This document shows, piece after piece, positions 5,817 through 60,866 of a stretch of DNA of 64,000 bases (positions are counted from its first letter, which is position 1; each line of letters opens with the position of its first letter). The translations under genes and the position numbers were made by a program. The stretch is taken from IMG/VR virus record IMGVR_UViG_3300040801_001224, positions 248,001 through 312,000 of that record; one strand, 5' to 3'. The notes below the pieces were generated by a model. The model searched no databases. It worked only from the letters and a program-made list of their open reading frames with translations, and was not told where the DNA came from.

Positions 5817-7694
5817 ATGATTAAAACAGACATAAATGAGGCAGTTAACCTGCACTGTTTATTGAGTGTTACAGATGAGAATGGCATTATTATTGACGCC
5901 AATCGGAAGTTCTGCGAAACCACAGGTTACTCTCTCGAAGAAATCAAAGGCCAGAAGCATTCGATGTTTAAATCGAACCAGCATCCCAAAGCGTTTTACG
6001 AGGATTTATGGAAAACAATATCCACCGGCAACATATGGCAATCTGAGATATGTGACCTAAATAAAGCTGGTGAAGAATGGTGGGCTGAGACTACAATCCT
6101 CCCTCAAATGGATGAGCATGGCAAAATATATCAATATGTGTCAGTTAAAACTCATATAAGAAAACCAACCGCAGAATCTCCTCATCTGCCCAGAAATATC
6201 ATTCGTGATGTTTCAAATGAAATAGTATTATTCAATGAAGATACACTTAGAATCGTTGACGTTAATGCTAAGGTTTGCTGTAACACTGGTTACGTTGAAG
6301 ATGGTGAATTTGAAAAGTTAACACTCCTGGATATCCTTAGCGAGTATGACAACGATGGCATACAAGAAATAGTTTCAAAAGCAAAGTATAGAAATGAAAC
6401 AGTGGAATTTGAGACTGTCGTAGAAAGGAAAGACGGTACATATTATGATGCTCTTGTGAGAGTTCAAAACTACCAAAAAGAAGATAACAATACGTTTGTC
6501 GCTTCTATTAAAGACCTAACACAACAAAAAAAGCATGAAATGGAAATAAGCCAAGCTAAGAAGATGGAAGTACTCAGTGAGGTAACAAGCAACATTGCTC
6601 ATGACTTCAACAATCTTCTTGCCACTATACTTGGTTTTAATAAGCTAATTGAGATGCAGAGTATCAGTGGTGAGTTTGACCGCAATAAAATATTAAATTA
6701 TTCAAAGAATATTGTTGACGCAGGAAATAAATCAAAAGAACTAGTTGCTAGTATGGTTGAGTTCTCTAAGAAAGCTGACAGAGACATGACCAAATACAAA
6801 CTATACGAACTGTCTGGACTAGTTGAAGAATCACTTGATCTGTTGAGTGCTGTACTGCCTAGCGATATCACGCTATCAAAGAAACTTGATTCTAACTTAC
6901 ACGTAAAAACCAATAACATCAAATTACACCAGATTATCATGAATCTATGCTTGAACGCCAAAGACGCTATTGATCAAACTGATGGCACAATTGAAGTTGG
7001 CGTTAGAATATATACTGATGAAATAGACAAATGTACCTCATGTAGAGAAAACTTACAGGGATCTTACATTGAGTTATATGTCAAAGACAACGGCAAGGGG
7101 ATAAGTCAAGAAAAACTAAAAGATATATTCAAGCCATATTATACAACAAAGTCTGATTTGAATGGTACTGGGACAGGCCTTTCTACTGTACATAAAATTA
7201 TGCACGAACATGAAGGACACATAGTAGTTAAGTCTATTCCTCAGGTAGGAAGTGTGTTCAGCATGTTATTCCCGTTTGTCGAACAGCCAGCACATGAAAA
7301 TGATGAAGAGACTGAATATAAACCAATGCCAGGCGGTGGTCGACAACTTCTCATTGTTGATGATCAACCAGCATTAGGACTATTCCTGCAAGATCTCACA
7401 AAGGAACATGGTTATGAGCCAATATATTTTCAGGACGGCAACCAAGCCTATGATTACTATGTTGGCCACCATAACGAAATTTCAGCAGTTATTACTGACA
7501 TGGGTATGCCAGGTATGAATGGCGTCGAGCTCGTAAAGAAAATATTTGAAATTACATCAGACCCGAAGGTTATTGTATGTTCAGGCAATGTTGCTCAGAT
7601 TGACTTCAATGAATTGCCTAAAACCTGTGCTGTGCTACCAAAGCCCATTAACATCAGTGACTTCTTCCAGGAACTTGACAGTTTAATCTATTGA
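5817..7694 (+). CDS. cytoplasmic hybrid sensor histidine kinase (PAS-PAS-HisKA-HATPase-REC)
   Basis: PAS NRKFCETTGYSLEEIKG; H-box AHDFNNLL; N-box QIIMNLCLNAKDA; DNGKGI; YTTK..GTGTGL; receiver IVDDQ, TDMGMPGMNG, PKP. Confidence 0.95.
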   Translation: MIKTDINEAVNLHCLLSVTDENGIIIDANRKFCETTGYSLEEIKGQKHSMFKSNQHPKAFYEDLWKTISTGNIWQSEICDLNKAGEEWWAETTILPQMDEHGKIYQYVSVKTHIRKPTAESPHLPRNIIRDVSNEIVLFNEDTLRIVDVNAKVCCNTGYVEDGEFEKLTLLDILSEYDNDGIQEIVSKAKYRNETVEFETVVERKDGTYYDALVRVQNYQKEDNNTFVASIKDLTQQKKHEMEISQAKKMEVLSEVTSNIAHDFNNLLATILGFNKLIEMQSISGEFDRNKILNYSKNIVDAGNKSKELVASMVEFSKKADRDMTKYKLYELSGLVEESLDLLSAVLPSDITLSKKLDSNLHVKTNNIKLHQIIMNLCLNAKDAIDQTDGTIEVGVRIYTDEIDKCTSCRENLQGSYIELYVKDNGKGISQEKLKDIFKPYYTTKSDLNGTGTGLSTVHKIMHEHEGHIVVKSIPQVGSVFSMLFPFVEQPAHENDEETEYKPMPGGGRQLLIVDDQPALGLFLQDLTKEHGYEPIYFQDGNQAYDYYVGHHNEISAVITDMGMPGMNGVELVKKIFEITSDPKVIVCSGNVAQIDFNELPKTCAVLPKPINISDFFQELDSLIY

Positions 7695-7719
7695 CACCAC
7701 CACTTTTCTTTGTTATAAT
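7691..7719 (+). promoter_or_regulatory. sigma70-type early promoter with CCAC box
   Basis: TTGACA-17-TATAAT. Confidence 0.85.
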
Positions 7720-7725
7720 GTACGT

Positions 7726-7950
7726 ATGAATTATGATACGTTTGTAACAGAAGTTAAGAAGCTTGGTGTTAAAAAACTCCTAAAAGAGGTCACTGAGTAT
7801 GTCGGTATATCCCCCACACAACAACGCTACGCCGAGTACAAAGGACAGCTCGTGGGCGCATACAGTCCAGCACAAGGCGGGGTCATATTTAAAAAGCCAC
7901 CTAACCGTTGGTCAAAGAGTGGCCGCAAATTTGAGGATGTTGATATCTAA
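7726..7950 (+). CDS. hypothetical protein
   Basis: ORF track; directly after promoter. Confidence 0.7.
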   Translation: MNYDTFVTEVKKLGVKKLLKEVTEYVGISPTQQRYAEYKGQLVGAYSPAQGGVIFKKPPNRWSKSGRKFEDVDI

Positions 7951-8300
7951 TGCTAGTCTCTAAAAAAGATACAATGAAAAAAATCACTGCTCGGTGGCCT
8001 AAAGAACCAACCAATAAAATTCGAGCCATCAAAGCCGTGCGGTCTATAGCCGATGTTAACTTAAAGGACGCAAAGAATTGGATTGAAAACAATCGTGTCG
8101 ACTCAGTATCAGGTTGGGTTGAATCACATCGAGTAGAAGACATTAAAAATTTAGTGTTAAGTAGTGGCGGTGATTGCGTATCAAACTCACAATTTGACAA
8201 ATATCGGGACGACATCAAAGAAATAGCTATGGCCGCCATGCTTGCCGACGATACTGAAGTAGCTGAAGAAATACTTAATTTTATAAATAAGTTCAGTTAA
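7950..8300 (+). CDS. protein with ribosomal bL12 C-terminal-domain-like segment
   Basis: NKIRAIKAVRSIADVNLKDAKNWIE resembles the bL12 CTD signature. Confidence 0.6.
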   Translation: MLVSKKDTMKKITARWPKEPTNKIRAIKAVRSIADVNLKDAKNWIENNRVDSVSGWVESHRVEDIKNLVLSSGGDCVSNSQFDKYRDDIKEIAMAAMLADDTEVAEEILNFINKFS

Positions 8301-8759
8301 CTATTGCTTGATAATAGTCTTTACCACGCCTTGGTTAATCTCTGTATTACCTTTGGACTGTACGAAATGTTGCGCTCTAACACGATAGAACTCGCAGTTT
8401 AAAACACCAGCACTAAAACCTTCAATGCTACGTGGACACTGGGTTGCCGGAGAAGTTATTGTAATGTCTATATCAACTGACTCAGCACCATCACGCAATG
8501 ATGCCAATGGATTGGGTTCATCGTCAGGTAATAGATCAAAAGGTTCAGCAACATTCTTTCCGGTGAACGCTTCGTCAATAGTTAGTACTGCGGCCACACC
8601 AGCTTCGGCAGAGTTAAAGCTGATAAAATCATCCTGCATATTACCCGCCATCTTTAATTCTAATGTCGCATTAGTTGCCGCAAATACGCTAATGATTGTT
8701 AAAATAAGTAAGAATAATAGAGCAACTACTAGAGTCGCCCCTTGTTGATTTTGTTTCAT
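8301..8759 (-). CDS. pilX: type IV pilus minor pilin PilX-like protein
   Basis: Prepilin leader QQG|ATLVVALLFLLILTII, LELKMAGNMQD..F..AEAG; GATAAATA box at 8765-8772 on minus strand. Confidence 0.9.
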   Translation of the reverse strand: MKQNQQGATLVVALLFLLILTIISVFAATNATLELKMAGNMQDDFISFNSAEAGVAAVLTIDEAFTGKNVAEPFDLLPDDEPNPLASLRDGAESVDIDITITSPATQCPRSIEGFSAGVLNCEFYRVRAQHFVQSKGNTEINQGVVKTIIKQ

Positions 8760-8780
8760 AGTAGTATTTATCACGCATAC

Positions 8781-16976: not shown

Positions 16977-17005
16977 ATTTTACGCAGTTCGTGGTAAATA
17001 CAGTT

Positions 17006-17392
17006 ATGTGTACCCTGACGAACTTTTGTGTATTAGATGACATCGACGGCATCACAATCATATGTTTAACAGACGATATGAGTCAACAAGATGCCATGCT
17101 TCTTATCGATCACTTGAGGGAACACGAACTGTACCATTATCGTCTGTTGGATTTTAATCAGTATCCATGTCAGATGTCTTCAAAAGACATTGAAGCACTT
17201 GCTGAATACGACAAGAAGTTTCCAGAAAAAAACTATGGTGCTCTGATTGCTAAAGACAACCTAACATATGGTTTAATGAGAAAATATGCGGCCCATCGTG
17301 AAATGGATGATCTAGCAACTATACGTGTATTTAGGACCATGCGTGAAGGCATAGCGTGGTTAAAAAAGAAAAGACACGATCAAGATAAATAA
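17006..17392 (+). CDS. STAS/SpoIIAA-like protein, copy 1
   Basis: LLDF...A(L/I)IA....YG..R...RVF....G..WL pattern; paralog of next gene. Confidence 0.65.
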   Translation: MCTLTNFCVLDDIDGITIICLTDDMSQQDAMLLIDHLREHELYHYRLLDFNQYPCQMSSKDIEALAEYDKKFPEKNYGALIAKDNLTYGLMRKYAAHREMDDLATIRVFRTMREGIAWLKKKRHDQDK

Positions 17393-17396: not shown

Positions 17397-17780
17397 ATGC
17401 TAATACATGACTTATACGACTTTAACTATGTCGATGGTATTCTTATGACTACCCTTAAACATAGCCCGACACTTGAGACAATCAGACAATTGGTTGATTA
17501 TCAGATCAAGACAGACCGTTATCGTTATCGTTTATTTGATTTTAATGGTTTTACTCCTGCTGAAATGAGGGCAAGTGAAGTCAGAAGATTAGCAGACTAT
17601 GATCGAGCATATCCAGAAGAAAGTTACTCAGCTATCATAGCTGATGACGCACTATTGTTTGGCATTGAACGCATGTTTGAAACCTACAGAGACCGCAGTG
17701 GTTATTCTCGAGTAAGAGTATTCAACGATAAAGAAAATGGTCTAACCTGGCTTAAATTACTACAAGCCAATAATTCTTAA
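17397..17780 (+). CDS. STAS/SpoIIAA-like protein, copy 2
   Basis: YRYRLFDFN, AIIADDALLFGIERMF, RVFNDKENGLTWL. Confidence 0.65.
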   Translation: MLIHDLYDFNYVDGILMTTLKHSPTLETIRQLVDYQIKTDRYRYRLFDFNGFTPAEMRASEVRRLADYDRAYPEESYSAIIADDALLFGIERMFETYRDRSGYSRVRVFNDKENGLTWLKLLQANNS

Positions 17781-20371: not shown

Positions 20372-21397
20372 ATGATAAAATACATTCTATTACTCTTATT
20401 ATTGGTTGGTTGCTCAGGTGATGATAACCCTGAGCCTGTTACTGAATTCGGCTTTACTATGCTTCAGCCCAATTCATACCAATTACAGTGGCCTGAAGAT
20501 CCAGATGCCACATATTACGTCATAGAAACAAACACAACGTCCAATATACTTAACATTGACTTATCAACTGTTGAATTGACTGATAACAAATATGTGTTTG
20601 AGTGGGATGTATTATTCAACGGCTCAGTACATCATAGGATAACGGCATGTACGATGAGTGGCTGTAAGGAGCCTGGAGAATGGTTATTAATATTTGAAGT
20701 GCCCCAATTTCCGGATACGCCATATCAGATAGACGTTCTAGCTGTATATGACAATAGAGCGTTTGATATAGACAACGGTATCGCAACTAAAATAAACAGG
20801 GACTTTGCTAAAATCAACGACATACTGCTCAATAACAATTTAGAGAGCTATGTAAAGTTTAACTTGGTGACAATGCGTCTGGACAGAACGTTTGATTGGC
20901 CACGTGACAACACAAGTGCTAATGAAGCGTTAATAAACGATCCTGAAATACAGGCATTGCGTGATGATGCTGGTGCAGATATAGTTATAGGTATAAACAC
21001 TGATCCGGGTTTCCCTGGTGGTGGTACCGGCAAAATGTATATGGATTCGGATAGAAAACAATTCTTCACGTTTTACACATACACCGAAATAGAACAACAG
21101 GCATACGCCACAGTAGCACAATATACGTTAGGTTCGGAAGATCACGTACTCTTACATGAGATGCTACACACATTTGGGTTACAGCATGACCTACAGACAG
21201 CGTTCATAGACTTCAATGTCAGTGCTGAATATTCTTATGCTCATGGTTTGCAGAGTGAACGGGAATGTACTATTATGGCAAGGGCGTGTCCACGTAATCT
21301 AATACTAGCAGATGAACCCACTAATACCGGTGGTTTTTCATCAAGTAACAAATTGCGTTTTATGGAAACAATTCCTGTTATAGCAGATTTTAGATAA
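20372..21397 (+). CDS. lipoprotein metzincin (reprolysin-like) zinc metallopeptidase
   Basis: lipobox LVG|C; HEMLHTFGLQHD; Met-turn CTIMA. Confidence 0.85.
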   Translation: MIKYILLLLLLVGCSGDDNPEPVTEFGFTMLQPNSYQLQWPEDPDATYYVIETNTTSNILNIDLSTVELTDNKYVFEWDVLFNGSVHHRITACTMSGCKEPGEWLLIFEVPQFPDTPYQIDVLAVYDNRAFDIDNGIATKINRDFAKINDILLNNNLESYVKFNLVTMRLDRTFDWPRDNTSANEALINDPEIQALRDDAGADIVIGINTDPGFPGGGTGKMYMDSDRKQFFTFYTYTEIEQQAYATVAQYTLGSEDHVLLHEMLHTFGLQHDLQTAFIDFNVSAEYSYAHGLQSERECTIMARACPRNLILADEPTNTGGFSSSNKLRFMETIPVIADFR

Positions 21398-22226: not shown

Positions 22227-22230
22227 AATT

Positions 22231-22309
22231 TTGAAGTACCCTAGAAGCAAGGGAAACCAAGTCGGAGACATTTTATATGTTGGTCAGGCGACAGGCGAGG
22301 GTACTTCAA
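22231..22309 (+). ncRNA. small RNA cassette with 12-bp perfect closing stem
   Basis: TTGAAGTACCCT/AGGGTACTTCAA. Confidence 0.55.
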
Positions 22310-22328: not shown

Positions 22329-22751
22329 ATGCAGATATTAACATTCATAGAAGACAGGGAAGCGTATGCCATTGACATAATGCAGGTCAAAGAAATTATA
22401 CGTTTAGATGAAAGTGCTGTGCGTCCTGTGCCTGGTGAAGGACCAGAGCATTATGGTTTAATGTATTTGCGTGAGACACCAATCAGTGTATTTAATGCCA
22501 ACATTGTGTTAGGATTAGCCGACACTGAAATAACAGATGAAACCCGTATTATTATATTGGAAGACGACGGACAGTTATATGGATTTTCATGTGACTCAAT
22601 ACGTGAAATATATCGGGTAGATGAAGGGGATATACAGAACCCTGTGGAACGTAGTAGATTTATACGTGGGGTTATATACTGTAAGGAACGTGATGAAACA
22701 GTCGTAATACTGGATCACGAAAACTTATTTGAATCCTTTTCAGAAAGATAA
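22329..22751 (+). CDS. cheW: chemotaxis coupling protein CheW
   Basis: YAIDIMQVKEII, GLMYLRETPISVF, RIIILE, GFSCDSIREI, FIRGVI, VVILDHENL. Confidence 0.9.
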   Translation: MQILTFIEDREAYAIDIMQVKEIIRLDESAVRPVPGEGPEHYGLMYLRETPISVFNANIVLGLADTEITDETRIIILEDDGQLYGFSCDSIREIYRVDEGDIQNPVERSRFIRGVIYCKERDETVVILDHENLFESFSER

Positions 22752-25022: not shown

Positions 25023-25928
25023 ATGAAACTAATCGTAATTTTATTCCTATCCTTATTCGTTGTATCCTGTGGGGGTGGAGGGAATAAGAGAGATGATACC
25101 AGACAGCCTCCAGTAATACCACCGCAGAAACCCTTTGTGGAAATATTTCCTGAATACAGGACTTATTTAAAAATGTATGGAACCCAGGATCAAATAAACA
25201 AAAACTCATGGGTATTCACAAGTCATAAAATCGACTATGAAGAATGTGAACGAAACGACACATCTCCCTGTCGGAAGACCAAAAAGCTATATTACTATGA
25301 CGCAAACCATGTTCCTGGTCGTGAAACAAAATGGACTTTTAACTTAACTGTTAATAAGTATAACATAATTGATCCACCTTACTGGATTATCATATTCCAA
25401 GATTGGTTCGATTATGATCCGAATGATTTTACTCCATCAGGCGCACAAGGCGGTAATCCACCATTTCAGACATTGAAGCTAAAAGAGTTTAGGGGTGCCT
25501 TACATTTAGGTGTGTTCAACAACAGGTGGCAATGGAACTATGACTATAACAATCCATATAATCCAACCGACCCAAGTGCCAATGACATTGACAAGCGACC
25601 AGTAAATGAACTAACAGGTTCCATACCGTTAGTCGTTGGAAGAACGTATCCAGTTGAAATAATCATTAGAGATGGCATAACACTTGAGCGTGGCAGTGTA
25701 CAGGTCAAGGTAAACGGTCGTCAGGTGAGCAACCAGTTTTACCGAACAAAGCCAGACAGATCTCCCCGCCCTGGTGCTGTTCAATTTGGACAATACTGGG
25801 ATAGAGAATACAATGGAAGAATTAATGGTTGTGTTGAAGCAACAGGCGAGTTAGAAAAGGACTGTAAGAGCAACACAGTAACTATAGAAAACTTCAGAGT
25901 ATTTGAGCGGAACGCTTTAACACAATAA
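25023..25928 (+). CDS. lipoprotein, possible polysaccharide-lyase-like beta-jelly roll
   Basis: lipobox VVS|CGGGG; WIIIFQDW and QFGQYW resemble lyase-fold strands; function tentative. Confidence 0.5.
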   Translation: MKLIVILFLSLFVVSCGGGGNKRDDTRQPPVIPPQKPFVEIFPEYRTYLKMYGTQDQINKNSWVFTSHKIDYEECERNDTSPCRKTKKLYYYDANHVPGRETKWTFNLTVNKYNIIDPPYWIIIFQDWFDYDPNDFTPSGAQGGNPPFQTLKLKEFRGALHLGVFNNRWQWNYDYNNPYNPTDPSANDIDKRPVNELTGSIPLVVGRTYPVEIIIRDGITLERGSVQVKVNGRQVSNQFYRTKPDRSPRPGAVQFGQYWDREYNGRINGCVEATGELEKDCKSNTVTIENFRVFERNALTQ

Positions 25929-30626: not shown

Positions 30627-33600
30627 ATGAACAAGTTAAAACTACTGTTATTAACAGCATTTCTTACACTATCATTGGGTGCTGATGATACAGAAATATA
30701 TCAATCAAATGTAAATAATAATTCTGGCGAGAAACCAAAGGTCTTAATTATATTTGATAATTCATCAAGTATGGTGACTAACAACGTAACACAGCAAGCA
30801 GTTGCGTATAATCCAAGCATAGATTACAATGGCAGTTTTCGTGATGACCGAATATATTGGTCCACAACAGGGACACCATCTGGCAATAACTATTTTAATG
30901 CTGGCCGTAACCGTTGTGCTGAATCATACGGACCATTAGCGGCTGAAGGCTTCTTTCAGACCAGGGCGCAACGTTGGCGTAGTAGTGGGCGTTTTGGTGG
31001 GTCATGGCGAAACCTAAGTCGCCGGGTAACAACACCGGTTCACGTTGATTGTGAAGCAGATGTGATCGCTGGCAATGTTGGCAATGGCAGTGGACAGAGT
31101 GATGGTCTTCCCTCACCAACTGGTCCTTACGGCGGCACTGGTAACGTCAACTGGGGTGGCAACTCTTATACATTCTATACAGGCAACTACCTAAACTGGT
31201 TCTTTAACGCCAGCACAGTTGAATCGACACGTTTAGCAGTAGCACAAGACGTAATACGTGACCTGGTATCTGCTAATACTGGCATTGATTTTGGCCTGAT
31301 GATATTCAACAATAACTCTGACTCACGTTGGGACGGTGGTCGAATCGTTAACTCCATTGTAGAAGGTGACGACGGAACACAGAGACAGTCCATATTAAAC
31401 AACATTGGACTGATAAATCCAAAAACCGGATCGCCATCTACCTTCACCCCACTATGTGAAACAACGTATGAAGCGTATCGTTATATGAGTGGACAGAGTG
31501 TTGTATTTGCCAATGAGATAAGATTAGGTGAAGACACTATACCCAAGGACCCTAAGGCTGAAAGCCCACTAGGTGTATACGATTCACCTGCTACGGACTG
31601 TGCTTTTACGTATATCATTCTAATGACAGACGGACAGCCAACTCGCGATGAGTCAGCAAATCAGTTCATACGTGATCTGACAGGCAAGGATTGTCTAACA
31701 TATGGTAATACCACAAGTTGTCTACCAATAATCGCAGAATACATGGCTAATACTGATCTAGACAATGACACAACTAATGGTAACCAGTATGCTATTACGT
31801 ATACCATTGGATTTACTACTGACCAGGAACTTTTACAGGATACAGCACGTTTGGGCAAGGGACAATACTTTACTGCTAATGATACAGCAAGTCTAACGGC
31901 GGCTTTCCAGGGTGCTATTACAGCCATCCTATCCACTAATTCAGCATTCACTTCACCAGCAGTAGCAGTGGACACGTTCAGCCGAACAGAGTCACGTGAC
32001 GATATATTCTTTGCTATGTTTGAGCCAAGTGACACAACTAACTGGCCAGGCAACATCAAACGTCTACGATTAGCAGATAGTTCTGGTGATAAAATACTAG
32101 TGGATGTCAATGGAGATCCTGCCCTCGATCCTTCTACCGGACGTATCAGAGACACGGCACAGACGTACTGGTCACCAAACATAGATGGCAATCAGGTAAC
32201 TGAGGGTGGTGTGGGTGAGCTATTAGCTAGGCGTGATCCTGATACTCGTGAGATTTACACTAACACTGGAACCGGTGGTTCATTAGAAGACTTTGATGAT
32301 GTTGCGTTCGATGTTGGTGCGTTTGGTGTCACAGATATAAATCAAGTGTATGATGAATTTAACGTAACTAACGCCATACAACTAACAGATTTGATCCTTT
32401 GGTCAGCTGGTTATGATGTTGATGACGAAAATAACAATGGTGACCGAACTGATGCGAGACCCTGGATACTTGCCGACATGCTACACTCAAAGCCTCTAGC
32501 TATCAACTATGGCGCAACAGGCGGTGTGTACGATAAAGACAACCCAAATATCAAGCTAGTAGTAGGCACTAATGGCGGTTTCTTCCACATGTTCAGCACT
32601 GACACCGGTGTAGAAGATTGGGCATTCTTCCCTAAAGAACTCAGCAGTATGTTGTTGGAAAGACGTGCTGAACGTGTGACTGCTGATAACGTATATGGCA
32701 TTGATGCTTCACCAGTTGTTTATATACTGGACAAAGAGCTTGACGGCACTATTGACGCCAGTGACGGTGACCGAGTTTATGTGTACTTTGGGTTACGTAG
32801 AGGAGGTAGCATACTATACGCTTTAGATATCACTGACCCAGGTAGCCCAGAGTTCTTATTTAAAATCGACAGGAACACAACTGGTTTTAGTCTATTAGGA
32901 CAAACTTGGAGTGAGCCATTGGTGACTACAATATCAGGACACGATGGTCCAGTGCTAATCTTTGGTGCTGGCTACGACACAAATAAGGACGCAACTGGCG
33001 TTGGTACGCCAGACAGTGTGGGCTTGGGTGTCTATGTCGTTGACGCAATCACCGGTCAACTGTTACGCAGTGTGACGCCAGCCGCTACAACTAACACCAA
33101 CCTACAAGCACCTATACAGCACAGTGTACCAAGTAATATTGCTGGCATAGATTCAAATGGTGGTGGTAATACCGACAGACTATACTTTGGTGACACTGGC
33201 GGTAACTTATGGCGTGTGGATATGCTTGGTGACCTTGACGAACAGAAATGGCGTGTCACTAAACTGGCTGATGTTAATGACGGAACGACGGCTGGTGATA
33301 GACGTTTCTTCAACGAACCGGATGTTGTTAGAACTAAGAGTACGCTATGTTTAGACGACGAGTGTACCCAAGTCGCTAATGTAAACTATGATGCGGTATT
33401 GATCGGTAGTGGTGACAGGACAAATCCTAACGCCACTGATGTAGCCAACGAGTTCTATATGTTCCGTGACTTCCAAACTGGAGCTTACAGTACTGACATA
33501 GCGGATTGCGATGATGACACAATCGTTGAATACAGATGCGACCTACCAATCACACCTGATGATTTGTATGACGCAACCACTGACATTGTTGGCACTGACG

Positions 33601-44414: not shown

Positions 44415-45575
44415 ATGTCAGAACGAGAACGTTTCGTAAGACCTTCAGTAGCAAAGACACTTATATCTGTTGCTATGCGAGCCCGCCGCCCAGTTTTCCT
44501 ATGGGGACCTCCTGGTATCGGTAAGTCAGACCTAATCGAACAGATTGGTCGTTCATTCCAACGCTTCAACGAGAATGGTGATGAGATTTCTAAGCCACGT
44601 CCAATCGTTGACATGCGCTTACTCCTAATGGATCCTACAGACATCAAGGGTATTCCTTATTACAACCCTGAGTCTAAGACTATGATCTGGGCACAGCCTG
44701 GTGAACTTCCTACTGAGGAAAATGGCTTAGAGAACGCTATCTTGTTCCTGGACGAGATGAATGCGGCTCCACCAAGTGTACAGGCCGCGGCTTACCAGCT
44801 GATCCTGAACCGTCGTGTTGGTGAGTACGTTCTGCCAGAAGGCGTTGACATTGTTGCCGCTGGTAACCGTGAGTCGGATCGTGGTGTTACTTACCGTATG
44901 CCTAGCCCACTGGCTAACCGTTTTGTTCACTTAGATATGGAATCTAACTTTGAAGATTGGCAGTTATGGGCAATTGAAAACGGTGTTCATGAGGACGTTG
45001 TTGGTTTCTTGAGTAAGCATACACAGAAACTGTTTACGTTTGACGCCAAGTCACCTGACAAGGCATTTGCTACTCCACGTTCATGGGTATTCGCAAGTGA
45101 ACTGTTATTCGAAGCTATTGAAAGTGGCTTAGGTAATCAGGAGCAGACTACCCTGGTAGCCGGTACTGTTGGTGAAGGCTTAGCTATTGAGTTTAACCAA
45201 CACCGTAAGTTTGCGGCGCAACTGCCTGACCCAATCGACGTATTGGAAGGCAAGGTTAAGAACCTTAACGTTGAGGAAGTATCTGCACACTACTCACTGG
45301 TTATTAGCTTATGCTACCGTTTGAAAGAGCTGGCTGGTATTGCTGGTGAGACTGAGGAAAACCGTCCGGAGAACCGTAAGGACCTGGATATGGACAAGTG
45401 GCATGAACTGGTTGACAACTTCCTGAAGTATATGTTGGACAACCTACAGCCAGAAATGGTTATCCTGGGTGCTCGTACAGCACTGAAAGACTTCAAACTT
45501 CCGGTCAAGCACCGTAAGCTGAAGCACTTCACAACCCTGTTTAAAGAATATGGTGACATGGTCCTCGGTCACTAG
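44415..45575 (+). CDS. MoxR-like AAA+ ATPase
   Basis: WGPPGIGKS Walker A, LFLDEMNAA Walker B, VAAGNR, PLANRFVH; promoter 44339-44367. Confidence 0.93.
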   Translation: MSERERFVRPSVAKTLISVAMRARRPVFLWGPPGIGKSDLIEQIGRSFQRFNENGDEISKPRPIVDMRLLLMDPTDIKGIPYYNPESKTMIWAQPGELPTEENGLENAILFLDEMNAAPPSVQAAAYQLILNRRVGEYVLPEGVDIVAAGNRESDRGVTYRMPSPLANRFVHLDMESNFEDWQLWAIENGVHEDVVGFLSKHTQKLFTFDAKSPDKAFATPRSWVFASELLFEAIESGLGNQEQTTLVAGTVGEGLAIEFNQHRKFAAQLPDPIDVLEGKVKNLNVEEVSAHYSLVISLCYRLKELAGIAGETEENRPENRKDLDMDKWHELVDNFLKYMLDNLQPEMVILGARTALKDFKLPVKHRKLKHFTTLFKEYGDMVLGH

Positions 45576-45630: not shown

Positions 45631-46023
45631 TTAGTCTTTATCAATCATGTACCAGGGTTCACCGGACTCATAACCTGAAACAGCTACGAACTCATAACCC
45701 TCATCTGTAAGCCAATCGTTACTAACAACTTGCTCATATCTATTATCTAATATCCAGCCTTCCACTTCTAATACAGCGTGGCCTTCACCTTCTTCTGTAT
45801 AACAAAATACTAGGCGTGAATCCAAACCGGCGTCACGTACTAATTTACGACAAGCTAGAGCAAAGTCTTCGCAGTCACCAACAATACGTGATGATCCGTC
45901 ATAATCAGCGTCTGGCATTACCCAATACTCATCCATGCCATATTGCTTCTCATCAAGCTTGTATGTAAATCTACGAAATACTTTGCGGTGTATTTTATCC
46001 AGGGTGTCCAATAAGTCGCTCAT
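45631..46023 (-). CDS. transglutaminase-like cysteine proteinase (BTLCP/LapG-like) catalytic domain
   Basis: GDCEDFAL, HAVL, ILDNR Cys-His-Asp triad. Confidence 0.88.
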   Translation of the reverse strand: MSDLLDTLDKIHRKVFRRFTYKLDEKQYGMDEYWVMPDADYDGSSRIVGDCEDFALACRKLVRDAGLDSRLVFCYTEEGEGHAVLEVEGWILDNRYEQVVSNDWLTDEGYEFVAVSGYESGEPWYMIDKD

Positions 46024-46032: not shown

Positions 46033-46560
46033 TTATAAAGTAACAACTACGTCTTCAAAGGCACTGGCTGGAGTTAATGGACCGATGTCAGTCCAGGATA
46101 CTCCGTCATCTGAGTATTGTACTTGCCAACCTGATCCAGCAGGTTTGTCTGCCGGCCAACCTGGTGGTCTCCAACCATTAATTAAGTTCACACGTTTAAT
46201 GTTTTTCTCATTACCAGCACCAAAATCTTGACCAACCCAACCTTGACCATCATTTCTTAATGAACTCCAGCGATTGCCACTTGCAACGACATTGCTTTTA
46301 TCGATTACATCATTAAACGCATTTTCTTTTAAGAATCTACTATCTAATTCACTGTCAGCAATAGCAAATGAAGTGCCAGTTACATCTGAGCCACCCGTAG
46401 TCTGTTCAAACATCTCAATCTCAATGATATCTAAGTCATTACTGCCTGCGTCAGGTATCCCATTAATTCTCCAATAACGGTGAGCACCACCTGATGATCC
46501 CTCTGCTATTGACTTTGTTTGGCCGCTCTGTTTAATCTGCCCTGCTATTTTTATACTCAT
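46033..46560 (-). CDS. discoidin/F5-8-like carbohydrate-binding virion protein
   Basis: HRYWRI, GWVGQDFG, WQVQYSDDGVSWTD. Confidence 0.7.
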   Translation of the reverse strand: MSIKIAGQIKQSGQTKSIAEGSSGGAHRYWRINGIPDAGSNDLDIIEIEMFEQTTGGSDVTGTSFAIADSELDSRFLKENAFNDVIDKSNVVASGNRWSSLRNDGQGWVGQDFGAGNEKNIKRVNLINGWRPPGWPADKPAGSGWQVQYSDDGVSWTDIGPLTPASAFEDVVVTL

Positions 46561-46573
46561 ATTTTATTTTTCC

Positions 46574-46774
46574 TTAGCAATCAGCTACCTTTGGTTTCTT
46601 ATCTGGATTCTTTTCATTCCATTCTTTTACACGTTTCTTTAGATCTTCACAACCCTGAAGCTTAATTGTTTCTTCTGTAGTCTGAAATTGTGTGGGTGTG
46701 GTTCGCTTCTTGCTCGGGTTAGTACCACAAGCTACGAGCGTGAATATTAATAATAGTGTAACCAGTATTTTCAT
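46574..46774 (-). CDS. small lipoprotein with a Cys pair
   Basis: lipobox LVA|C; GCEDLKKR...ADC*. Confidence 0.75.
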   Translation of the reverse strand: MKILVTLLLIFTLVACGTNPSKKRTTPTQFQTTEETIKLQGCEDLKKRVKEWNEKNPDKKPKVADC

Positions 46775-46787
46775 TATTTATTTTGTT

Positions 46788-47462
46788 CTAACTTGCAGGC
46801 CAACCCGCTGTAAAGCCTGATGGCACAGTATAAACAAAAGGCGAATCCCCAAAGTTTATAGTCTGTGTAAAACCGAGTGAGTTTGACGAAGTGTCTGACA
46901 GAGCAATATGATATGGAACATCCGCTACTGGGTTTGTCGTTGTTGTTTTGTTGGCAGTATTACCTGCTTCAATTTCAGATATAGTTGCGCCTTCCAAATA
47001 AACACCATTGCGTGATAGCCATATAGCATTATTGTCTAAGTCGATCGCCAATCCGAATACATCTCCTGCAACTGCCTGCAAGATAGAGTCGATATCTCTA
47101 CCCACGCCAGTGCCTAGGTCATGTATGCCAAAGGATGCCCAATTACTCTGTGTGCCTGAATACAGATACCCTGTGGTACGTACAAGACCAAACCACAGAC
47201 TGTTATCTGGGTTAGTGTCCAGCGTGAGCTCCACATAGTATTTGCCAGTTTCGTAAGTTGACACTGACCGAACTCCGCCGCGGCCGCCACCCACTTTGCT
47301 TGCCTGTAATCCTGACACAGACCAGTAGTCTGTTGGGCTGGGGAATGCTCCGGCTGGAGCTGGATAATCCCATGAATCTCCTGATGGTGGTGGTGGTGGC
47401 TGATCACCTGCTTTAAAGCTTCCCGATGGTACCTTGAAGCTTCCTGATAATTTTAAAGTCAT
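46788..47462 (-). CDS. SPRY/B30.2-like domain protein
   Basis: GKYYVELT, GDVFGLAIDLD..IW..RNG, INFG.SPF...PSGF. Confidence 0.8.
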   Translation of the reverse strand: MTLKLSGSFKVPSGSFKAGDQPPPPPSGDSWDYPAPAGAFPSPTDYWSVSGLQASKVGGGRGGVRSVSTYETGKYYVELTLDTNPDNSLWFGLVRTTGYLYSGTQSNWASFGIHDLGTGVGRDIDSILQAVAGDVFGLAIDLDNNAIWLSRNGVYLEGATISEIEAGNTANKTTTTNPVADVPYHIALSDTSSNSLGFTQTINFGDSPFVYTVPSGFTAGWPAS

Positions 47463-47578
47463 AGTTTGTTCCTCTTGGTTATGTTACACTTATTTATCAT
47501 AAAAACGCATAACCCATCAGGAAAGCTATATTACAAGACTTTAGATAAATACTACTATTATTAACGGGTTTTATTTAT

Positions 47579-53867: not shown

Positions 53868-53916
53868 AGTCCTAAGAATAGACTTGGGCAATCAACCAAT
53901 AAAGGGAGACTTTATT

Positions 53917-59759: not shown

Positions 59760-59956
59760 ACGAACCTCTAAAAATTGTTATTAGTGTAGACGAATATGAA
59801 CATTTCAAAAATCTTTTGAATGGGCACGGTATTGAGTTCAAAGCATACCAGGGTCCTAAGATTTCATTGATGGTGATAGAGATTGAAGATGAGCAGGATG
59901 CCGCATTTGTTAAACTTAAATATTTTGGAAAGAGTGACGGATTTTATGGTGGATGA
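59756..59956 (+). CDS. small protein of the FxxxxDxxxFxL family
   Basis: IEDEQDAAFVKLKYFG. Confidence 0.65.
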   Translation: MNEPLKIVISVDEYEHFKNLLNGHGIEFKAYQGPKISLMVIEIEDEQDAAFVKLKYFGKSDGFYGG

Positions 59957-60176
59957 AGAATTATTATATAAAACGTTGGCTGGGTTCACAGCCATCGAAG
60001 ACGACGGTTACTTACTTGACAACGGTTATTTAAAACATATATCAAGTGATAACTTTTTTAGTGCCGGCAATTTCATAGAATACAAAGCCCTTAAAGACTT
60101 TACGTTTAATGGCATAACTGTATTGGAAGGTAACCGGGTCAACATATATTCAGATGGATCAATATTAGTAAAATGA
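59883..60176 (+). CDS. hypothetical protein (true start probably internal)
   Basis: ORF track. Confidence 0.5.
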   Translation: MKMSRMPHLLNLNILERVTDFMVDEELLYKTLAGFTAIEDDGYLLDNGYLKHISSDNFFSAGNFIEYKALKDFTFNGITVLEGNRVNIYSDGSILVK

Positions 60177-60400
60177 GAATGACAATAACAGTTGACGGAC
60201 ATAGAGTCCCAGCAATCTTAGACCAAATGCCATGTGGCGGGACACCAATATTTGACCATGAGTCAGGTACATATTCCTACAGATGTGATTCATGCTTTGC
60301 GGTGATCGGTAGCATAGGCCAGCCACAGTCCTGTAAAGACATAAATGAGTTTGCAGAGAAAATGGGTTTTGAAAATGCTAACAGTACCGCATGTGATTAG
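60173..60400 (+). CDS. small Cys-rich protein
   Basis: PCGG...YRCDSCFAVIGSIGQP..C. Confidence 0.65.
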   Translation: MRMTITVDGHRVPAILDQMPCGGTPIFDHESGTYSYRCDSCFAVIGSIGQPQSCKDINEFAEKMGFENANSTACD

Positions 60401-60460
60401 ATACCACATACACTTTGGTGATCAGTTGCCACTGTTTAGTATTTATGATTGGGAGTTTGA

Positions 60461-60682
60461 TTGATGGCAGTGATAATGGCCACAATACCAAGTGACCGAA
60501 GTCCCGGTTGCTGGGCTAGAGTTAAAGAAGCTCTTAAGGAGCAAGGGTATAATGTAGATCGATACTTCATTAACCACAGAAACATGATGGTATTCGATAC
60601 AGATCCTGAATCAGCACTGGCGTTTAAATTAACATACGGCAGTAACAGCACAGTTAACGCCGATGATATACTAGATAAATAG
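60461..60682 (+). CDS. small protein of the FxxxxDxxxFxL family
   Basis: VFDTDPESALAFKLTYG. Confidence 0.6.
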   Translation: MMAVIMATIPSDRSPGCWARVKEALKEQGYNVDRYFINHRNMMVFDTDPESALAFKLTYGSNSTVNADDILDK

Positions 60683-60686
60683 AGTT

Positions 60687-60866
60687 ATGGAAGTACAACA
60701 AACTAATTCAACAGCTAATACTCCACCGCCAACAGCGTCGACTGACAATGTCCAGAAAGAAGCTGAGATTGCGGTCGATGTTCAGCGCAAGCGTGAACAG
60801 GTAGAAGAAGTGACTGAAGCCAGTTCTGACAGCCAACTCGGCACAAACATTGACGTATACGCCTAA
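60687..60866 (+). CDS. 59-aa protein with YjfB-like (putative motility) C-terminus
   Basis: hand translation ending QLGTNIDVYA*; GATAAATA at 60674. Confidence 0.6.
   Translation: MEVQQTNSTANTPPPTASTDNVQKEAEIAVDVQRKREQVEEVTEASSDSQLGTNIDVYA

What the first reader, a model, noticed from the sequence alone, without database searches (positions are those of the whole stretch)
5817..60866. Dispersed host motility, surface and signalling kit
Seen as separate insertions among phage genes: hybrid kinase (5817), PilX, two STAS-like proteins (17006, 17397), metzincin lipoprotein (20372), CheW (22329), lyase-like lipoprotein (25023), PilY1, LapG-like protease (45631) and YjfB-like peptide (60687). Several follow GATAAATA boxes. 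Inference: a coordinated late programme altering motility or biofilm state of the infected cell, beyond typical metabolic auxiliary genes.
Basis: inference. Interest (0 to 1): 0.75.

Follow-up and report, generated by a model that had tools for sequence, protein, structure and literature searches.

The report
Jumbo phage carrying host pilus-tip and signalling genes
A complete 328-kb phage from a microbial mat carries intact, phage-adapted copies of bacterial pilus-tip, chemotaxis, kinase and c-di-GMP genes, most behind its own late-type promoter, so it probably rewires its host's surface, though what that achieves is untested.

Summary
The window is the tRNA-rich accessory arm of a complete 328-kb T4-superfamily jumbo phage.

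**Confirmed calls**
- PAS-HisKA-HATPase-REC hybrid kinase, PilX, CheW and a metzincin lipoprotein.
- Full-length PilY1, about 50% identical to bacterial PilY1.
- A protease with the LapG fold.

**Weaker calls**
- The two STAS-like proteins and the lyase lipoprotein are supported only as leads.
- The YjfB call fails.

**Further findings**
- The genome also encodes a GGDEF-EAL protein, a degenerate GGDEF and a CheY-like receiver outside the window.
- GATAAATA is real: 25 sites against 4.2 expected. It is a genome-wide T4-like late promoter that also precedes the tail tube and virion genes, and a gp55-like sigma factor is present. Nine of 13 kit genes carry it or its GGTAAATA variant.
- PilX and PilY1 derive from one low-GC gammaproteobacterial lineage and are predicted to bind each other.
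- PilY1, PilX and CheW were found in no other genuine phage record searched.
- The "LapG" lacks a signal peptide and belongs to a conserved jumbo-phage family, so it is not a host insertion.

Timing, coordination and phenotype remain inferred: no relatives or transcripts were available to test them. Interest is moderate to high.

The parts
5817..7694 (+). Cytoplasmic hybrid histidine kinase (2 PAS, HisKA, HATPase_c, receiver), 625 aa
   Evidence: Pfam. Motifs read: H-box AHDFNNLL, DNGKGI, GTGTGL, receiver DD...D...KP, no TM segment. GATAAATA lies 20 nt upstream at 5789-5796. No Hpt was found in the genome.
8301..8759 (-). PilX minor pilin, 152 aa. The real start is the ATG at 8759, not the GTG at 8774.
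   Evidence: PilX_N, E 1.3e-12. 47% identical (E 1e-41) to the PilX next to the best bacterial PilY1 hit. GATAAATA-N5-ATG at 8765-8772 on the minus strand. Predicted to bind the phage PilY1.
17006..17392 (+). STAS/SpoIIAA-like protein 1, 128 aa (lead only)
   Evidence: No Pfam hit. Atlas structure TM 0.80-0.82 to STAS/SEC14 and SpoIIAA-like clusters. The variant box GGTAAATA-N5-ATG lies at 16993-17000.
17397..17780 (+). STAS/SpoIIAA-like protein 2, 127 aa (lead only); the protein sequences suggest a paralogue of the first
   Evidence: No Pfam hit. Atlas TM 0.77-0.81. GATAAATA-N5-ATG at 17384-17391.
20372..21397 (+). Secreted metzincin (reprolysin-like M12) lipoprotein, 341 aa
   Evidence: Reprolysin_5 and Reprolysin_3 above cut-off. 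Lipobox LLVGC, HEMLHTFGLQHD and a Met-turn read. No late box; it follows tRNA-Gly.
22329..22751 (+). Single-domain CheW, 140 aa
   Evidence: PF01584, E 8.7e-25. PDB 2QDL, E 3e-8. Only about 30% identical to cellular CheW domains. One 89% homologue on a 967-bp contig, giving dN/dS 0.17. No late box.
25023..25928 (+). Lipoprotein, probable polysaccharide lyase (PF14099-like), 301 aa (lead)
   Evidence: No Pfam hit. Atlas feature score 0.96 with 191 shared features to heparin-lyase-I/Polysacc_lyase clusters. Lipobox VVSC. GATAAATA lies 22 nt upstream at 24993-25000.
30627..34013 (+). Full-length PilY1 (signal peptide, vWA with MIDAS, beta-propeller), 1128 aa
   Evidence: PF05567. PDB 3HX6, E 7e-11. 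45-53% identical over its full length to more than 100 bacterial PilY1 proteins. Sister to the PilY1 of a 43% GC bacterial contig. The signal peptide and DNSSS are kept, but the Ca loop reads DSNGGGNTD. GATAAATA at 30593-30600.
45631..46023 (-). Minimal LapG-fold cysteine protease (BTLCP), 130 aa, no signal peptide
   Evidence: Peptidase_C93, E 2.5e-15. C51/H82/D93 are conserved in the family. The family profile hits LapG 4U65/4FGO. The AF2 model (pLDDT 92) matches LapG at TMq 0.74. Homologues lie on jumbo-phage-like contigs, some next to a MoxR-type AAA gene.
46033..47462 (-). Three genes upstream of the BTLCP in one minus-strand operon: a 224-aa protein, a 66-aa lipoprotein and a 175-aa F5/8-type-C-like protein
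   Evidence: Weak F5_F8_type_C hits. PHROG hits to domains of tail and virion proteins. GATAAATA at 47491-47498 (minus strand), 28 nt before the first ATG.
60687..60866 (+). 59-aa ORF behind GATAAATA-N5-ATG; the YjfB likeness is not supported
   Evidence: YjfB_motility E 0.035, 14.6 bits against a cut-off of 27. Box at 60674-60681.
44415..45575 (+). MoxR-type AAA ATPase, convergent with the BTLCP; this neighbourhood recurs in a related contig
   Evidence: AAA_5. The same neighbourhood is seen in L112.

Best explanation
**Setting.** The window is the tRNA-rich accessory arm of a complete jumbo phage: 328,096 bp, direct terminal repeats, about 40% GC, from a microbial mat. It belongs to the T4 superfamily, near the PA5oct, Atu_ph07 and Rak2-like phages. 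Over a long period it has taken up host-type envelope and signalling genes and placed them under its own control.

**Core unit.** The best-supported unit is a cognate PilX-PilY1 pair, the tip and priming subcomplex of the type IV pilus. Both genes trace to one low-GC gammaproteobacterial lineage, where they are neighbours in fimU-pilVWXY1E. Both keep their export signals. They are predicted to bind each other.

**Inferred mechanism for the pair.**
- I infer that the host's Sec and prepilin pathways export them, and that they enter the host pilus machine in place of the host's own PilX and PilY1.
- I infer that this changes the pilus tip late in infection. One Ca-loop ligand that is nearly invariant in bacteria is Gly in the phage copy.
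- The most likely benefit is altering or withdrawing a phage receptor, which would exclude competing phages or protect progeny. This resembles prophage P-FimU.

**The other genes.**
- CheW, the CheY-like receiver, the Hpt-less hybrid kinase, the GGDEF-EAL protein, the degenerate GGDEF and the two STAS-like proteins have no partners in the phage genome. They can therefore only act by plugging into host circuits.
- The metzincin and lyase lipoproteins would act on the envelope or matrix.

**Expression.** Nine of 13 of these genes sit behind G[AG]TAAATA. This T4-like late box also drives the tail tube and virion genes and is presumably read by the gp55-like sigma factor.

**Shown:** presence, integrity, origin, composition, purifying selection on CheW, the promoter association, and the predicted PilX-PilY1 interface.

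**Inferred:** timing, incorporation into host machines, the benefit, and any coordination.
For: **Phage identity**
- IMG/VR rates the record 100% complete with direct terminal repeats.
- The tail sheath is 52% identical to that of PA5oct. Structural gene families appear.

**Gene identities**
-.

**PilX and PilY1**
- PilY1 aligns at 45-53% identity over its full length with bacterial PilY1.
- The best hit lies in a fimU-pilVWXY1E operon on a bacterial contig.
- The phage PilY1 is sister to that copy with support 100.
- The phage PilX is 47% identical to the adjacent PilX on that contig.
- The PilY1 C-terminal domain plus PilX scored 0.75 against a best control of 0.03. That mark was reached by 58 of 80 solved complexes and 2 of 110 mismatched pairs.
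- The signal peptide and MIDAS motif are kept. Ca-loop position 5 is Gly in the phage, against Asp in 113 of the 115 pattern matches among database homologues (one of the two exceptions is the phage's own entry, matched at another site).

**Adaptation to the phage**
- GC, GC3 and codon adaptation of 12 of the 13 kit genes lie within about 1.5 sd of the phage's genes; the unconfirmed 59-aa YjfB-like ORF is the exception (GC +2.3 sd).
- CheW gives dN/dS 0.17 against its 89% homologue.

**Promoter**
- 25 sites in the window against 4.2 expected.
- The box precedes the tail tube, three virion proteins and a tail-fibre-like gene.
- The extended form is GATAAATA-N4-TA.
- A gp55-like gene lies at genome 65476-66384.
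- Seven of 13 kit genes carry exact GATAAATA against 68 of 502 genes overall (Fisher p 5e-4). Nine of 13 carry it when the GGTAAATA variant is counted.

**Missing partners**
- No Hpt, MCP, prepilin N_methyl, PilZ, T2SSE, SpoIIE or HATPase_c_2 family was found in the genome.

**Precedent**
- Prophage FimU replaces host FimU at the pilus tip and blocks tip-binding phages (PMC12952977).
Against: - **No expression data.** Same-sample metatranscriptome contigs do not hold the stretch, so 'late' rests on motif analogy alone.
- **The box is common.** It precedes 16% of all called ORFs, and the kit list is a subjective selection. The enrichment p-value is therefore soft.
- **Four kit genes lack the box:** CheW, the metzincin, the receiver and the GGDEF-EAL protein.
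- **Co-occurrence cannot be tested.**
  - No close relative holds these genes.
  - Twelve distant relatives, three of them complete, lack CheW and PilY1.
- **Only two pilus parts are present.** Only PilX and PilY1 are found, and whether they fit the host's PilV, PilW, FimU and PilE is unknown.
- **Host and receptor are unknown.** The host has not been identified, and nothing shows that this phage or its competitors use pili as a receptor.
- **The timing is odd for exclusion.** Exclusion functions are usually made early or by prophages rather than late.
- **The complex score may partly reflect family likeness** rather than binding by this particular copy.
Confidence: 0.4

Rival explanations
1. 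The genes form one coordinated late programme that changes the motility or biofilm state of the infected cell. PilX and PilY1 would feed surface sensing and c-di-GMP. CheW and the CheY-like receiver would jam chemosensory arrays. The kinase and the GGDEF-EAL protein would reset c-di-GMP. The protease, metzincin and lyase would release the cell or the progeny from the mat matrix.
For: - All the parts belong to surface-behaviour circuits.
- The shared late-type box precedes 9 of 13 of them.
- The GGDEF-EAL protein keeps GGDEF and EVL. The second GGDEF is degenerate but keeps RxxD, as a receptor would.
- The phage comes from a microbial mat.
- From established knowledge, not tested here:
  - In Pseudomonas aeruginosa, PilW, PilX and PilY1 raise c-di-GMP and repress swarming.
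  - Excess CheW disrupts receptor arrays in E. coli.
Against: - The LapG-fold protease has no signal peptide and no LapD-like partner, and it is a conserved jumbo-phage gene. The adhesin-release step therefore fails.
- YjfB is not supported.
- The box is a general promoter.
- There are no co-occurrence, timing or phenotype data.
- A behavioural change late in a lytic cycle has little time to take effect.
Confidence: 0.25
2. These are unrelated morons. Each gene was captured and kept for its own small benefit, or is in transit, and they share nothing beyond lying in the phage's plastic, tRNA-rich arm. Any new gene in that arm needs its own short promoter.
For: - The region also holds 26 tRNAs, homing endonucleases, and NAD, queuosine and redox genes.
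- The box also precedes homing endonucleases.
- The genes have different histories:
  - CheW is only about 30% identical to any cellular copy.
  - PilY1 is about 50% identical to bacterial copies.
  - The BTLCP family is widespread in jumbo-phage-like contigs.
- Distant relatives lack CheW and PilY1.
Against: - PilX and PilY1 share a donor lineage and a predicted interface, yet they lie 22 kb apart. They have therefore been kept as a pair.
- The theme recurs 13 times in one genome, including three genes outside the window.
- No PilY1, PilX or CheW turned up in 50,697 phage records. The only PilY1 matches are two records labelled Acinetobacter phage MD-2021a, and these look bacterial to me (my reading of the annotations).
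Confidence: 0.28
3. This is an assembly artefact: bacterial DNA was stitched into a phage contig.
For: The record is a metagenome assembly covered only about 3-4x in the runs laid. Those runs come from the same sample as the assembly.
Against: - Each gene stands alone between phage ORFs and tRNAs.
- Composition and codon use match the phage.
- The phage's own box lies 5-28 nt before nine of the genes.
- Small contigs bridge both PilY1 junctions with no discordant joints.
- A second sample holds a 90% identical CheW.
Confidence: 0.02
4. PilY1 and PilX are virion parts, for example a tail adhesin borrowed from the pilus.
For: They share the late box with the structural genes.
Against: PilY1 keeps a Sec signal peptide, and PilX keeps a prepilin-type leader and hydrophobic helix. 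Both would therefore leave the cytoplasm, where tailed virions assemble. Neither matches any PHROG family (for PilX).
Confidence: 0.03

Closest known systems
Prophage-encoded FimU (P-FimU) of F10-like Pseudomonas phages (Sztanko et al., Cell Rep 2026, PMC12952977)
   Same: A phage copy of a pilus-tip component that is built into the host pilus in place of the host protein and changes what binds to the tip.
   Different: - Here the parts are PilX plus the large adhesin PilY1, not FimU.
- The carrier is a 328-kb, apparently lytic T4-like phage rather than a temperate siphovirus.
- The genes sit behind a late-type box rather than being expressed from a prophage.
- Identity to bacterial copies is about 50% rather than about 30%.
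- Function is untested.
Bacterial fimU-pilVWXY1E minor-pilin/PilY1 operon
   Same: Full-length homology, export signals and the vWA MIDAS motif are kept, and a PilX-PilY1 interface is predicted.
   Different: - Only two of the six genes are present.
- They lie 22 kb apart on opposite strands.
- Each has a phage promoter.
- The PilY1 Ca loop lacks the Asp found in nearly all bacterial homologues.
T4 late transcription (gp55 sigma factor, TATAAATA box)
   Same: An 8-bp AT-rich box with no -35 element precedes the structural genes, a gp55 homologue is present, and gene order 55-47-46 is conserved.
   Different: - The first base is G, giving G[AG]TAAATA.
- A frequent class places the ATG exactly 5 nt after the box, which implies leaderless mRNAs.
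- No transcripts have been mapped.
LapG/LapD adhesin-release system (Pseudomonas fluorescens, Legionella)
   Same: The BTLCP fold and the Cys-His-Asp triad are shared, and the top structural matches are LapG.
   Different: - It has 130 aa against about 180 in mature LapG.
- It has no signal peptide.
- There is no LapD: the phage GGDEF-EAL protein has two adjacent TM helices with no periplasmic domain, and its catalytic motifs are intact.
- It belongs to a short family that is widespread on jumbo-phage-like contigs.
Phage T5 Llp lipoprotein (receptor masking that protects progeny); recalled from general knowledge, not tested here
   Same: A phage-made envelope protein that alters the receptor during lytic growth.
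   Different: Llp blocks FhuA directly. Here pilus parts would be replaced, and it is not known whether the pilus is a receptor.

Membership tests
PilY1 (type IV pilus tip adhesin / biogenesis factor) | C-terminal PilY1 beta-propeller domain | tested here: met
   PF05567 scores 31.7 bits against a cut-off of 28.1. PDB 3HX6, E 7e-11. Full-length alignment to bacterial PilY1.
PilY1 (type IV pilus tip adhesin / biogenesis factor) | Sec signal peptide and N-terminal vWA domain with a MIDAS DxSxS motif | tested here: met
   The signal sequence ends in LSLGA, followed by the conserved DDTEIY. DNSSS sits at the MIDAS position.
PilY1 (type IV pilus tip adhesin / biogenesis factor) | EF-hand-like Ca loop (D-x-N-x-D-x-x-x-D) that governs extension and retraction | tested here: inconclusive
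   The loop is present but reads DSNGGGNTD. Position 5 is Gly in the phage and Asp in 113 of the 115 pattern matches among database homologues (one exception is the phage's own entry, matched at another site). The effect on Ca binding is unknown.
PilY1 (type IV pilus tip adhesin / biogenesis factor) | Encoded in a minor-pilin operon (fimU-pilVWXY1E) | tested here: not met
   It stands alone between a truncated UDP-glucose dehydrogenase-like gene and small phage ORFs. No N_methyl prepilins were found in the genome.
PilX minor pilin | PilX_N domain with a short leader and a hydrophobic N-terminal helix | tested here: met
   PF14341, E 1.3e-12. The sequence was read. It is 47% identical to a bacterial PilX.
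PilX minor pilin | Binds PilY1 in the tip subcomplex | tested here: inconclusive
   The model supports binding (0.75 against a best control of 0.03; 58 of 80 solved complexes and 2 of 110 mismatched pairs reach the mark). It is a prediction only.
CheW coupling protein | Single CheW domain spanning the whole protein | tested here: met
   PF01584 positions 1-136 of 138, E 8.7e-25. PDB 2QDL.
CheW coupling protein | Cognate CheA and MCP to couple | tested here: not met
   No MCPsignal hit above cut-off and no Hpt in the phage genome. It would have to use the host's.
Hybrid histidine kinase phosphorelay | HisKA H-box, HATPase N/G boxes and a receiver with the acceptor Asp | tested here: met
   Pfam; motifs read.
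Hybrid histidine kinase phosphorelay | Hpt domain and a terminal response regulator | tested here: not met
   No Hpt. The only other receiver is a 122-aa stand-alone protein at genome 234873-235241.
LapG (periplasmic adhesin-release protease) | BTLCP fold with a Cys-His-Asp triad | tested here: met
LapG (periplasmic adhesin-release protease) | Signal peptide and periplasmic location | tested here: not met
   The N-terminus is hydrophilic with no hydrophobic segment. Homologues are equally short, 119-139 aa.
LapG (periplasmic adhesin-release protease) | LapD-type partner (TM-periplasmic domain-TM-HAMP with degenerate GGDEF-EAL) | tested here: not met
   The only GGDEF-EAL protein has adjacent TM helices, no periplasmic domain, and intact GGDEF and EVL motifs. 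It lies 180 kb away.
Metzincin (M12 reprolysin-like) | HEXXHXXGXXH zinc site and a Met-turn | tested here: met
   Reprolysin_5 scores 36.5 bits against a cut-off of 27. HEMLHTFGLQHD and CTIM were read.
Polysaccharide lyase (PF14099) | Match to the family model | tested here: inconclusive
   No Pfam hit at E 0.01. Atlas feature score 0.96 and structure TM 0.57.
STAS / anti-sigma-antagonist | STAS fold plus a partner-switching kinase or phosphatase | tested here: inconclusive
   The fold is supported only by Atlas models (TM about 0.8). No Pfam hit. No SpoIIE or HATPase_c_2 in the genome.
YjfB_motility | Match to PF14070 above cut-off | tested here: not met
   14.6 bits against a cut-off of 27, E 0.035, over the C-terminal 17 positions only.
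T4-type late promoter | Conserved -10-like box before structural genes, plus a gp55-type sigma factor | tested here: met
T4-type late promoter | Late transcripts starting just after the box | not testable with these tools
   None of the RNA runs listed holds the stretch.

The most novel reading that the evidence does not exclude
A lytic jumbo phage makes its own matched PilX-PilY1 tip complex with an altered calcium switch. Together with a surrogate CheW, a CheY-like receiver, a kinase and c-di-GMP enzymes, it takes over the host's pilus and surface-sensing circuits late in infection. This would be a viral takeover of bacterial surface behaviour in a mat, not just receptor masking by a single protein.
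Probability: 0.2. Interest if true: 0.85.

Novelty: new variant of a known kind. Interest (0 to 1): 0.62.

Why it matters
Phages are known to disable or disguise type IV pili with small inhibitors, and prophages do so with a FimU copy.

**What would be new**
- A phage-encoded PilY1, the 1,100-residue tip adhesin and mechanosensor, together with its matching PilX.
- These two in the same genome as CheW, a CheY-like receiver, a hybrid kinase and c-di-GMP enzymes.

**How rare it appears**
- None of PilY1, PilX or CheW was found in any other genuine record among 50,697 deposited phage records.
- PilY1 and CheW were also absent from 2.9 million IMG/VR contigs, within the reach of the pattern search; PilX was not searched there.
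- A survey of 224 jumbo phages contains none of the words chemotaxis, pilus or transglutaminase.

**What it would offer if functional**
- A natural set of dominant pilus-tip and chemosensory variants for studying pilus priming and the PilY1 calcium switch.
- A case of a virus steering host surface behaviour in a biofilm-like habitat.

**By-products**
- A clear late-promoter consensus for this little-studied jumbo-phage clade, including a likely class of leaderless late mRNAs.
- Evidence that a minimal LapG-fold protease is a conserved jumbo-phage gene.

Tried and rejected
**Searches for relatives and co-occurrence**
- Megablast and blastn of the window against 50,697 phage records found only a tRNA and scattered NAMPT or hydrolase fragments.
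- IMG/VR scans with the tail sheath found only fragments at 59-70% identity or distant complete genomes at 45-50%.
- IMG/VR scans with PilY1 (single sequence and alignment), CheW and the kinase found nothing. The scan with GGDEF-EAL found one unrelated 30% hit.
- CheW and PilY1 family searches in 12 related virus records found nothing. The PilY1 control rang in no control genome, so that null result is weak.

**Expression**
- The metatranscriptomes listed from the same sample do not hold the stretch, and none of their contigs laid on it. This is no proof of silence.

**Host naming**
- The IleRS of the bacterial contig that carries the nearest PilX and PilY1 is at most 63% identical to 401 sampled Gammaproteobacteria, and the output gave no taxon names.
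- That sample included the unpublished genome G054. No claim here rests on it.

**Families sought in the phage genome and not found**
- Hpt, MCPsignal (16 bits only), N_methyl, PilZ, T2SSE (sub-threshold P-loop hits only), SpoIIE and HATPase_c_2.

**Rejected readings**
- The BTLCP as a host-derived LapG.
- The 60687 ORF as YjfB.
- The contig as a chimera.
- PilX and PilY1 as virion proteins.

**Other**
- Most INPHARED 'hits' for the kinase, GGDEF-EAL and PilY1 fall in records that look mislabelled and bacterial, such as Acinetobacter phage MD-2021a and Salmonella WGS contigs. This is my reading of their annotations.

Full report
**What the window is.**
- The 64-kb window is bases 248,001-312,000 of a single 328,096-bp contig. 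IMG/VR lists it as a virus record with direct terminal repeats, 100% complete. It was assembled from a microbial-mat metagenome.
- GC is about 40% throughout.
- The genome encodes a tail sheath (52% identical to Pseudomonas phage PA5oct and 47-50% to Atu_ph07, Phosso and the Rak2-like phages), a tail tube, virion proteins, long-tail-fibre-like proteins, an SbcC-like nuclease and a Lon-type protease. It is therefore a T4-superfamily jumbo phage with no close sequenced relative.
- The window itself is an accessory arm. It holds 26 tRNA genes, GIY-YIG, NUMOD and HNH endonucleases, NAD-salvage, queuosine, redox and UV-repair genes, a MoxR ATPase with a DUF2201 VWA/metallopeptidase, and many small ORFs of unknown function.

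**Checking the listed genes.** Eight of the eleven calls hold up as stated or nearly so.
- **Kinase.** The 625-aa protein at 5817 is a soluble PAS-PAS-HisKA-HATPase-receiver hybrid kinase with all catalytic motifs.
- **PilX.** It lies on the minus strand at 8301-8759 (PilX_N, E 1e-12).
- **CheW.** It is a clean single-domain protein (E 9e-25).
- **Metzincin.** It has a lipobox, the HEXXHXXGXXHD zinc site and a Met-turn.
- **PilY1.**
  - It is full length. It has a Sec signal peptide and a vWA domain with an intact MIDAS motif. Its C-terminal propeller matches Pfam PF05567 and the solved P. aeruginosa domain.
  - It aligns end to end at 45-53% identity with more than a hundred bacterial PilY1 proteins, mostly from Halieaceae.
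- **STAS-like pair and lyase lipoprotein.** They have no Pfam match.
  - STAS/SpoIIAA-like folds at TM about 0.8.
  - Polysacc_lyase features at 0.96.
- **YjfB-like ORF.** It scores 14.6 bits against a cut-off of 27 and only over its last 17 residues, so this call is not supported.

- It has the LapG fold. The family profile hits LapG structures at E 9e-12. An AlphaFold model (pLDDT 92) matches LapG at TMq 0.74. The Cys-His-Asp triad is conserved.
- It is only 130 residues long and has no signal peptide.
- Its homologues are equally short proteins. Two of them lie on jumbo-phage-like contigs of 322 kb and 216 kb, in quite different neighbourhoods. In a closer relative the gene lies convergent with a MoxR-type AAA gene, exactly as in the window.
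- The only GGDEF-EAL protein in the genome has no periplasmic domain and keeps intact catalytic motifs, so it is not a LapD.
- The protease is therefore a conserved jumbo-phage gene of unknown substrate, probably cytoplasmic. It is not a captured adhesin-release enzyme.

**The kit is larger than the window.** Searching the whole genome for signalling families found three more members:
- A 658-aa membrane GGDEF-EAL protein with GGDEF and EVL intact, at genome 112,033-114,009, among the tail genes.
- A 122-aa stand-alone receiver with the acceptor Asp, at genome 234,873-235,241.
- A 218-aa membrane protein with a degenerate GGDEF (SDNAF) that keeps the RxxD site, at genome 244,152-244,808.

Conversely, the genome holds no Hpt, MCP, CheA-type partner, further prepilins, PilZ, pilus ATPases, or partner-switching kinases or phosphatases. 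Every one of these phage proteins is an orphan part that could act only through host machinery.

**Origin and adaptation.**
- In a tree of 36 PilY1 proteins, the phage copy is sister (support 100, 56% identity) to the PilY1 of a 43% GC bacterial contig. That gene sits in a canonical fimU-pilVWXY1E operon next to pilSR.
- The phage PilX is 47% identical (E 1e-41) to the PilX immediately upstream of that same gene. The two phage genes therefore come from one lineage, where they are neighbours. In the phage they are 22 kb apart on opposite strands, each with its own promoter.
- A complex prediction of the PilY1 C-terminal domain with PilX scored 0.75 against a best control of 0.03. That mark is reached by 58 of 80 solved complexes and 2 of 110 mismatched pairs. 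The interface uses the PilY1 C-terminal strand and the calcium-loop region. This supports the two still being a matched pair, but it does not prove it.
- GC, GC3 and codon adaptation of 12 of the 13 kit genes lie within about 1.5 standard deviations of the phage's own genes; the unconfirmed 59-aa YjfB-like ORF is the outlier (GC +2.3 sd). Named Halieaceae loci are about 60% GC.
- CheW is only about 30% identical to any cellular CheW domain. It has one 89% homologue on a 967-bp contig from another sample, and the pair gives dN/dS 0.17.
- These are old, maintained phage genes, not fresh contamination.
- Small same-sample contigs bridge both PilY1 junctions without discordant joints.

**An oddity in PilY1.**
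- The EF-hand-like calcium loop of the propeller reads DSNGGGNTD in the phage. In P. aeruginosa this loop governs pilus extension against retraction; that is general knowledge and was not tested here.
- The fifth position is Asp in 113 of the 115 pattern matches among database homologues; one of the two exceptions is the phage's own entry, matched at another site.
- In the predicted complex this loop touches PilX. Whether the change weakens calcium binding is unknown.

**The GATAAATA box.**
- **Frequency.** It occurs 25 times in the window against 4.2 expected (maximum 9 in 100 shuffles). Genome-wide there are 78 on the + strand against 21 on the - strand, while the other NATAAATA words occur 12-19 times per strand.
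- **Position.** Fifty-three of the 78 plus-strand sites lie within 60 nt of a gene start.
- **Extended form.** The consensus is GATAAATA-N4-T-A, with A at 77% six bases after the box. GGTAAATA shows the same strand bias, 23 to 3.
- **Genes it precedes.**
  - It sits before the tail tube, three virion structural proteins, a 962-aa tail-fibre-like protein and a minor-tail-like protein.
  - It also sits before homing endonucleases.
- **Where it is rare.** It is almost absent from the densely packed first 30 kb, with three sites.
- **Sigma factor.** The genome has a gp55-like gene (genome 65,476-66,384; E 4e-6 to 7e-8 against T4 gp55), followed by gp47- and gp46-like genes as in T4.
- **Reading.** By analogy with T4's TATAAATA, this is most likely the late promoter.
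- **Leaderless class.** Sixteen sites place an ATG exactly five bases after the box. The conserved A would then be both the transcription start and the first base of the start codon, which implies leaderless late mRNAs.

**Which kit genes have the box.**
- The kinase, the lyase, PilY1 and the minus-strand operon that ends in the BTLCP have it 20-28 nt upstream, with a Shine-Dalgarno sequence in between.
- PilX, STAS-2, the 60687 ORF and the degenerate GGDEF have the leaderless arrangement. STAS-1 has GGTAAATA-N5-ATG.
- CheW and the metzincin follow tRNA genes and have no box. The receiver and GGDEF-EAL genes have none either.
- Seven of 13 kit genes carry exact GATAAATA against 68 of 502 ORFs overall (Fisher p 5e-4). 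This figure is soft: the kit list was chosen by eye, and the ORF set comes from a simple caller.
- The box shows that these genes are wired into the phage's own, probably late, transcription. It does not single them out as a separate programme.

**Rarity.**
- tblastn against 50,697 deposited phage records found no CheW and no PilX. PilY1 matched only two records labelled Acinetobacter phage MD-2021a, and these look bacterial from their annotations.
- IMG/VR scans with PilY1 (single sequence and a 12-sequence alignment) and with CheW found nothing.
- Twelve related virus records, three of them complete, lack CheW and PilY1.
- PHROGs holds a weakly matching CheW-like family and several kinase families. 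Such signalling genes are therefore not unheard of in phages.
- A survey of 224 jumbo phages contains none of the words chemotaxis, pilus or transglutaminase.
- The nearest published precedent is prophage FimU, which replaces host FimU at the pilus tip and blocks tip-binding phages (PMC12952977).

**Interpretation.**
- I rank first (0.40) a model in which the PilX-PilY1 pair is exported and displaces the host's copies in the pilus priming and tip complex during late infection. This would alter or withdraw a receptor or adhesin.
  - The orphan signalling parts would perturb host pilus, chemosensory and c-di-GMP circuits.
  - The two lipoprotein enzymes would act on the envelope or matrix.
It loses its LapG and YjfB steps and has no timing or phenotype support.
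- Independent morons (0.28) cannot be excluded while no relatives are available.
- Chimerism (0.02) and a virion role (0.03) are unlikely.
- Only presence, integrity, ancestry, adaptation and promoter association are shown. Timing, incorporation, benefit and coordination are inferred.

**Verdict.** This is a real and unusual gene set in a novel jumbo phage. It is a new variant of a known kind, namely phage-encoded host surface components and signalling auxiliary genes. A phage PilX-PilY1 pair is the most striking element. Interest is 0.62.

Noticed in passing
window 8765-8772(-), 15504, 17384, 19205, 22810, 28645, 43702, 60674 (+); 16 sites genome-wide: GATAAATA is followed by exactly 5 nt and then ATG. 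The generally conserved A six bases after the box coincides with the A of the start codon, which implies leaderless late mRNAs with no Shine-Dalgarno sequence.
   Followed up: partly
window 18270-18347 (+): ARAGORN calls a tRNA of unknown identity with a four-base anticodon, tttg, inside the 26-tRNA array. It could be a frameshift-suppressor-like tRNA or a prediction artefact.
   Followed up: no
window 33150-33180 (PilY1 residues 844-852): The PilY1 calcium loop reads DSNGGGNTD. Ligand position 5 is Gly, against Asp in 113 of the 115 pattern matches among database homologues. In the predicted complex the loop lies at the PilX interface.
   Followed up: partly
genome 65476-70007 (outside the window; loci L002/L019): A gp55-like late sigma gene (302 aa, longer than T4's 185) is followed by a GIY-YIG homing endonuclease with its own GATAAATA box, and then by gp47- and gp46-like genes in T4 order.
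   Followed up: partly
genome 213150-216485 and 235301-237670 (outside the window; L008, L009): The Lon-type protease carries a large insert that matches terminase, primase or helicase-loader PHROGs, which is intein-like. The family-B DNA polymerase ORF ends in an intein splicing domain.
   Followed up: no
window 7950-8300 (+): A 116-aa protein with a ribosomal L7/L12 C-terminal domain (E 4e-7) lies between the kinase and PilX.
   Followed up: no
window 44415-45575 (+), 55525-56754 (+), 52821-55413 (+): A MoxR-type AAA ATPase, a DUF2201 metallopeptidase/VWA protein, and a gene pair read as NMN-adenylyltransferase-like (by eye only) plus NAMPT. The short BTLCP sits next to the AAA gene here and in a related contig.
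   Followed up: partly
window 29761-30561 (+): A 266-aa UDP-glucose/GDP-mannose dehydrogenase-like protein lacks the first ~64 positions of the N-terminal NAD-binding-domain profile and has no match to the family's C-terminal domain. It lies directly upstream of PilY1.
   Followed up: no
window 1427-2344, 27375-27977, 34265-35299, 40758-42788: A QueE-like N-terminus (no Pfham hit; read by eye), a weak QueC/PP-loop match, a UvdE UV endonuclease and an amidoligase-domain protein. These are further host-type metabolic and repair genes in the same arm.
   Followed up: no
window 22230-22747 versus L109: A relative from another sample shares 91% nucleotide identity across CheW and about 100 nt upstream. 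The homology stops right at the CheW stop codon, so the downstream neighbour differs.
   Followed up: partly
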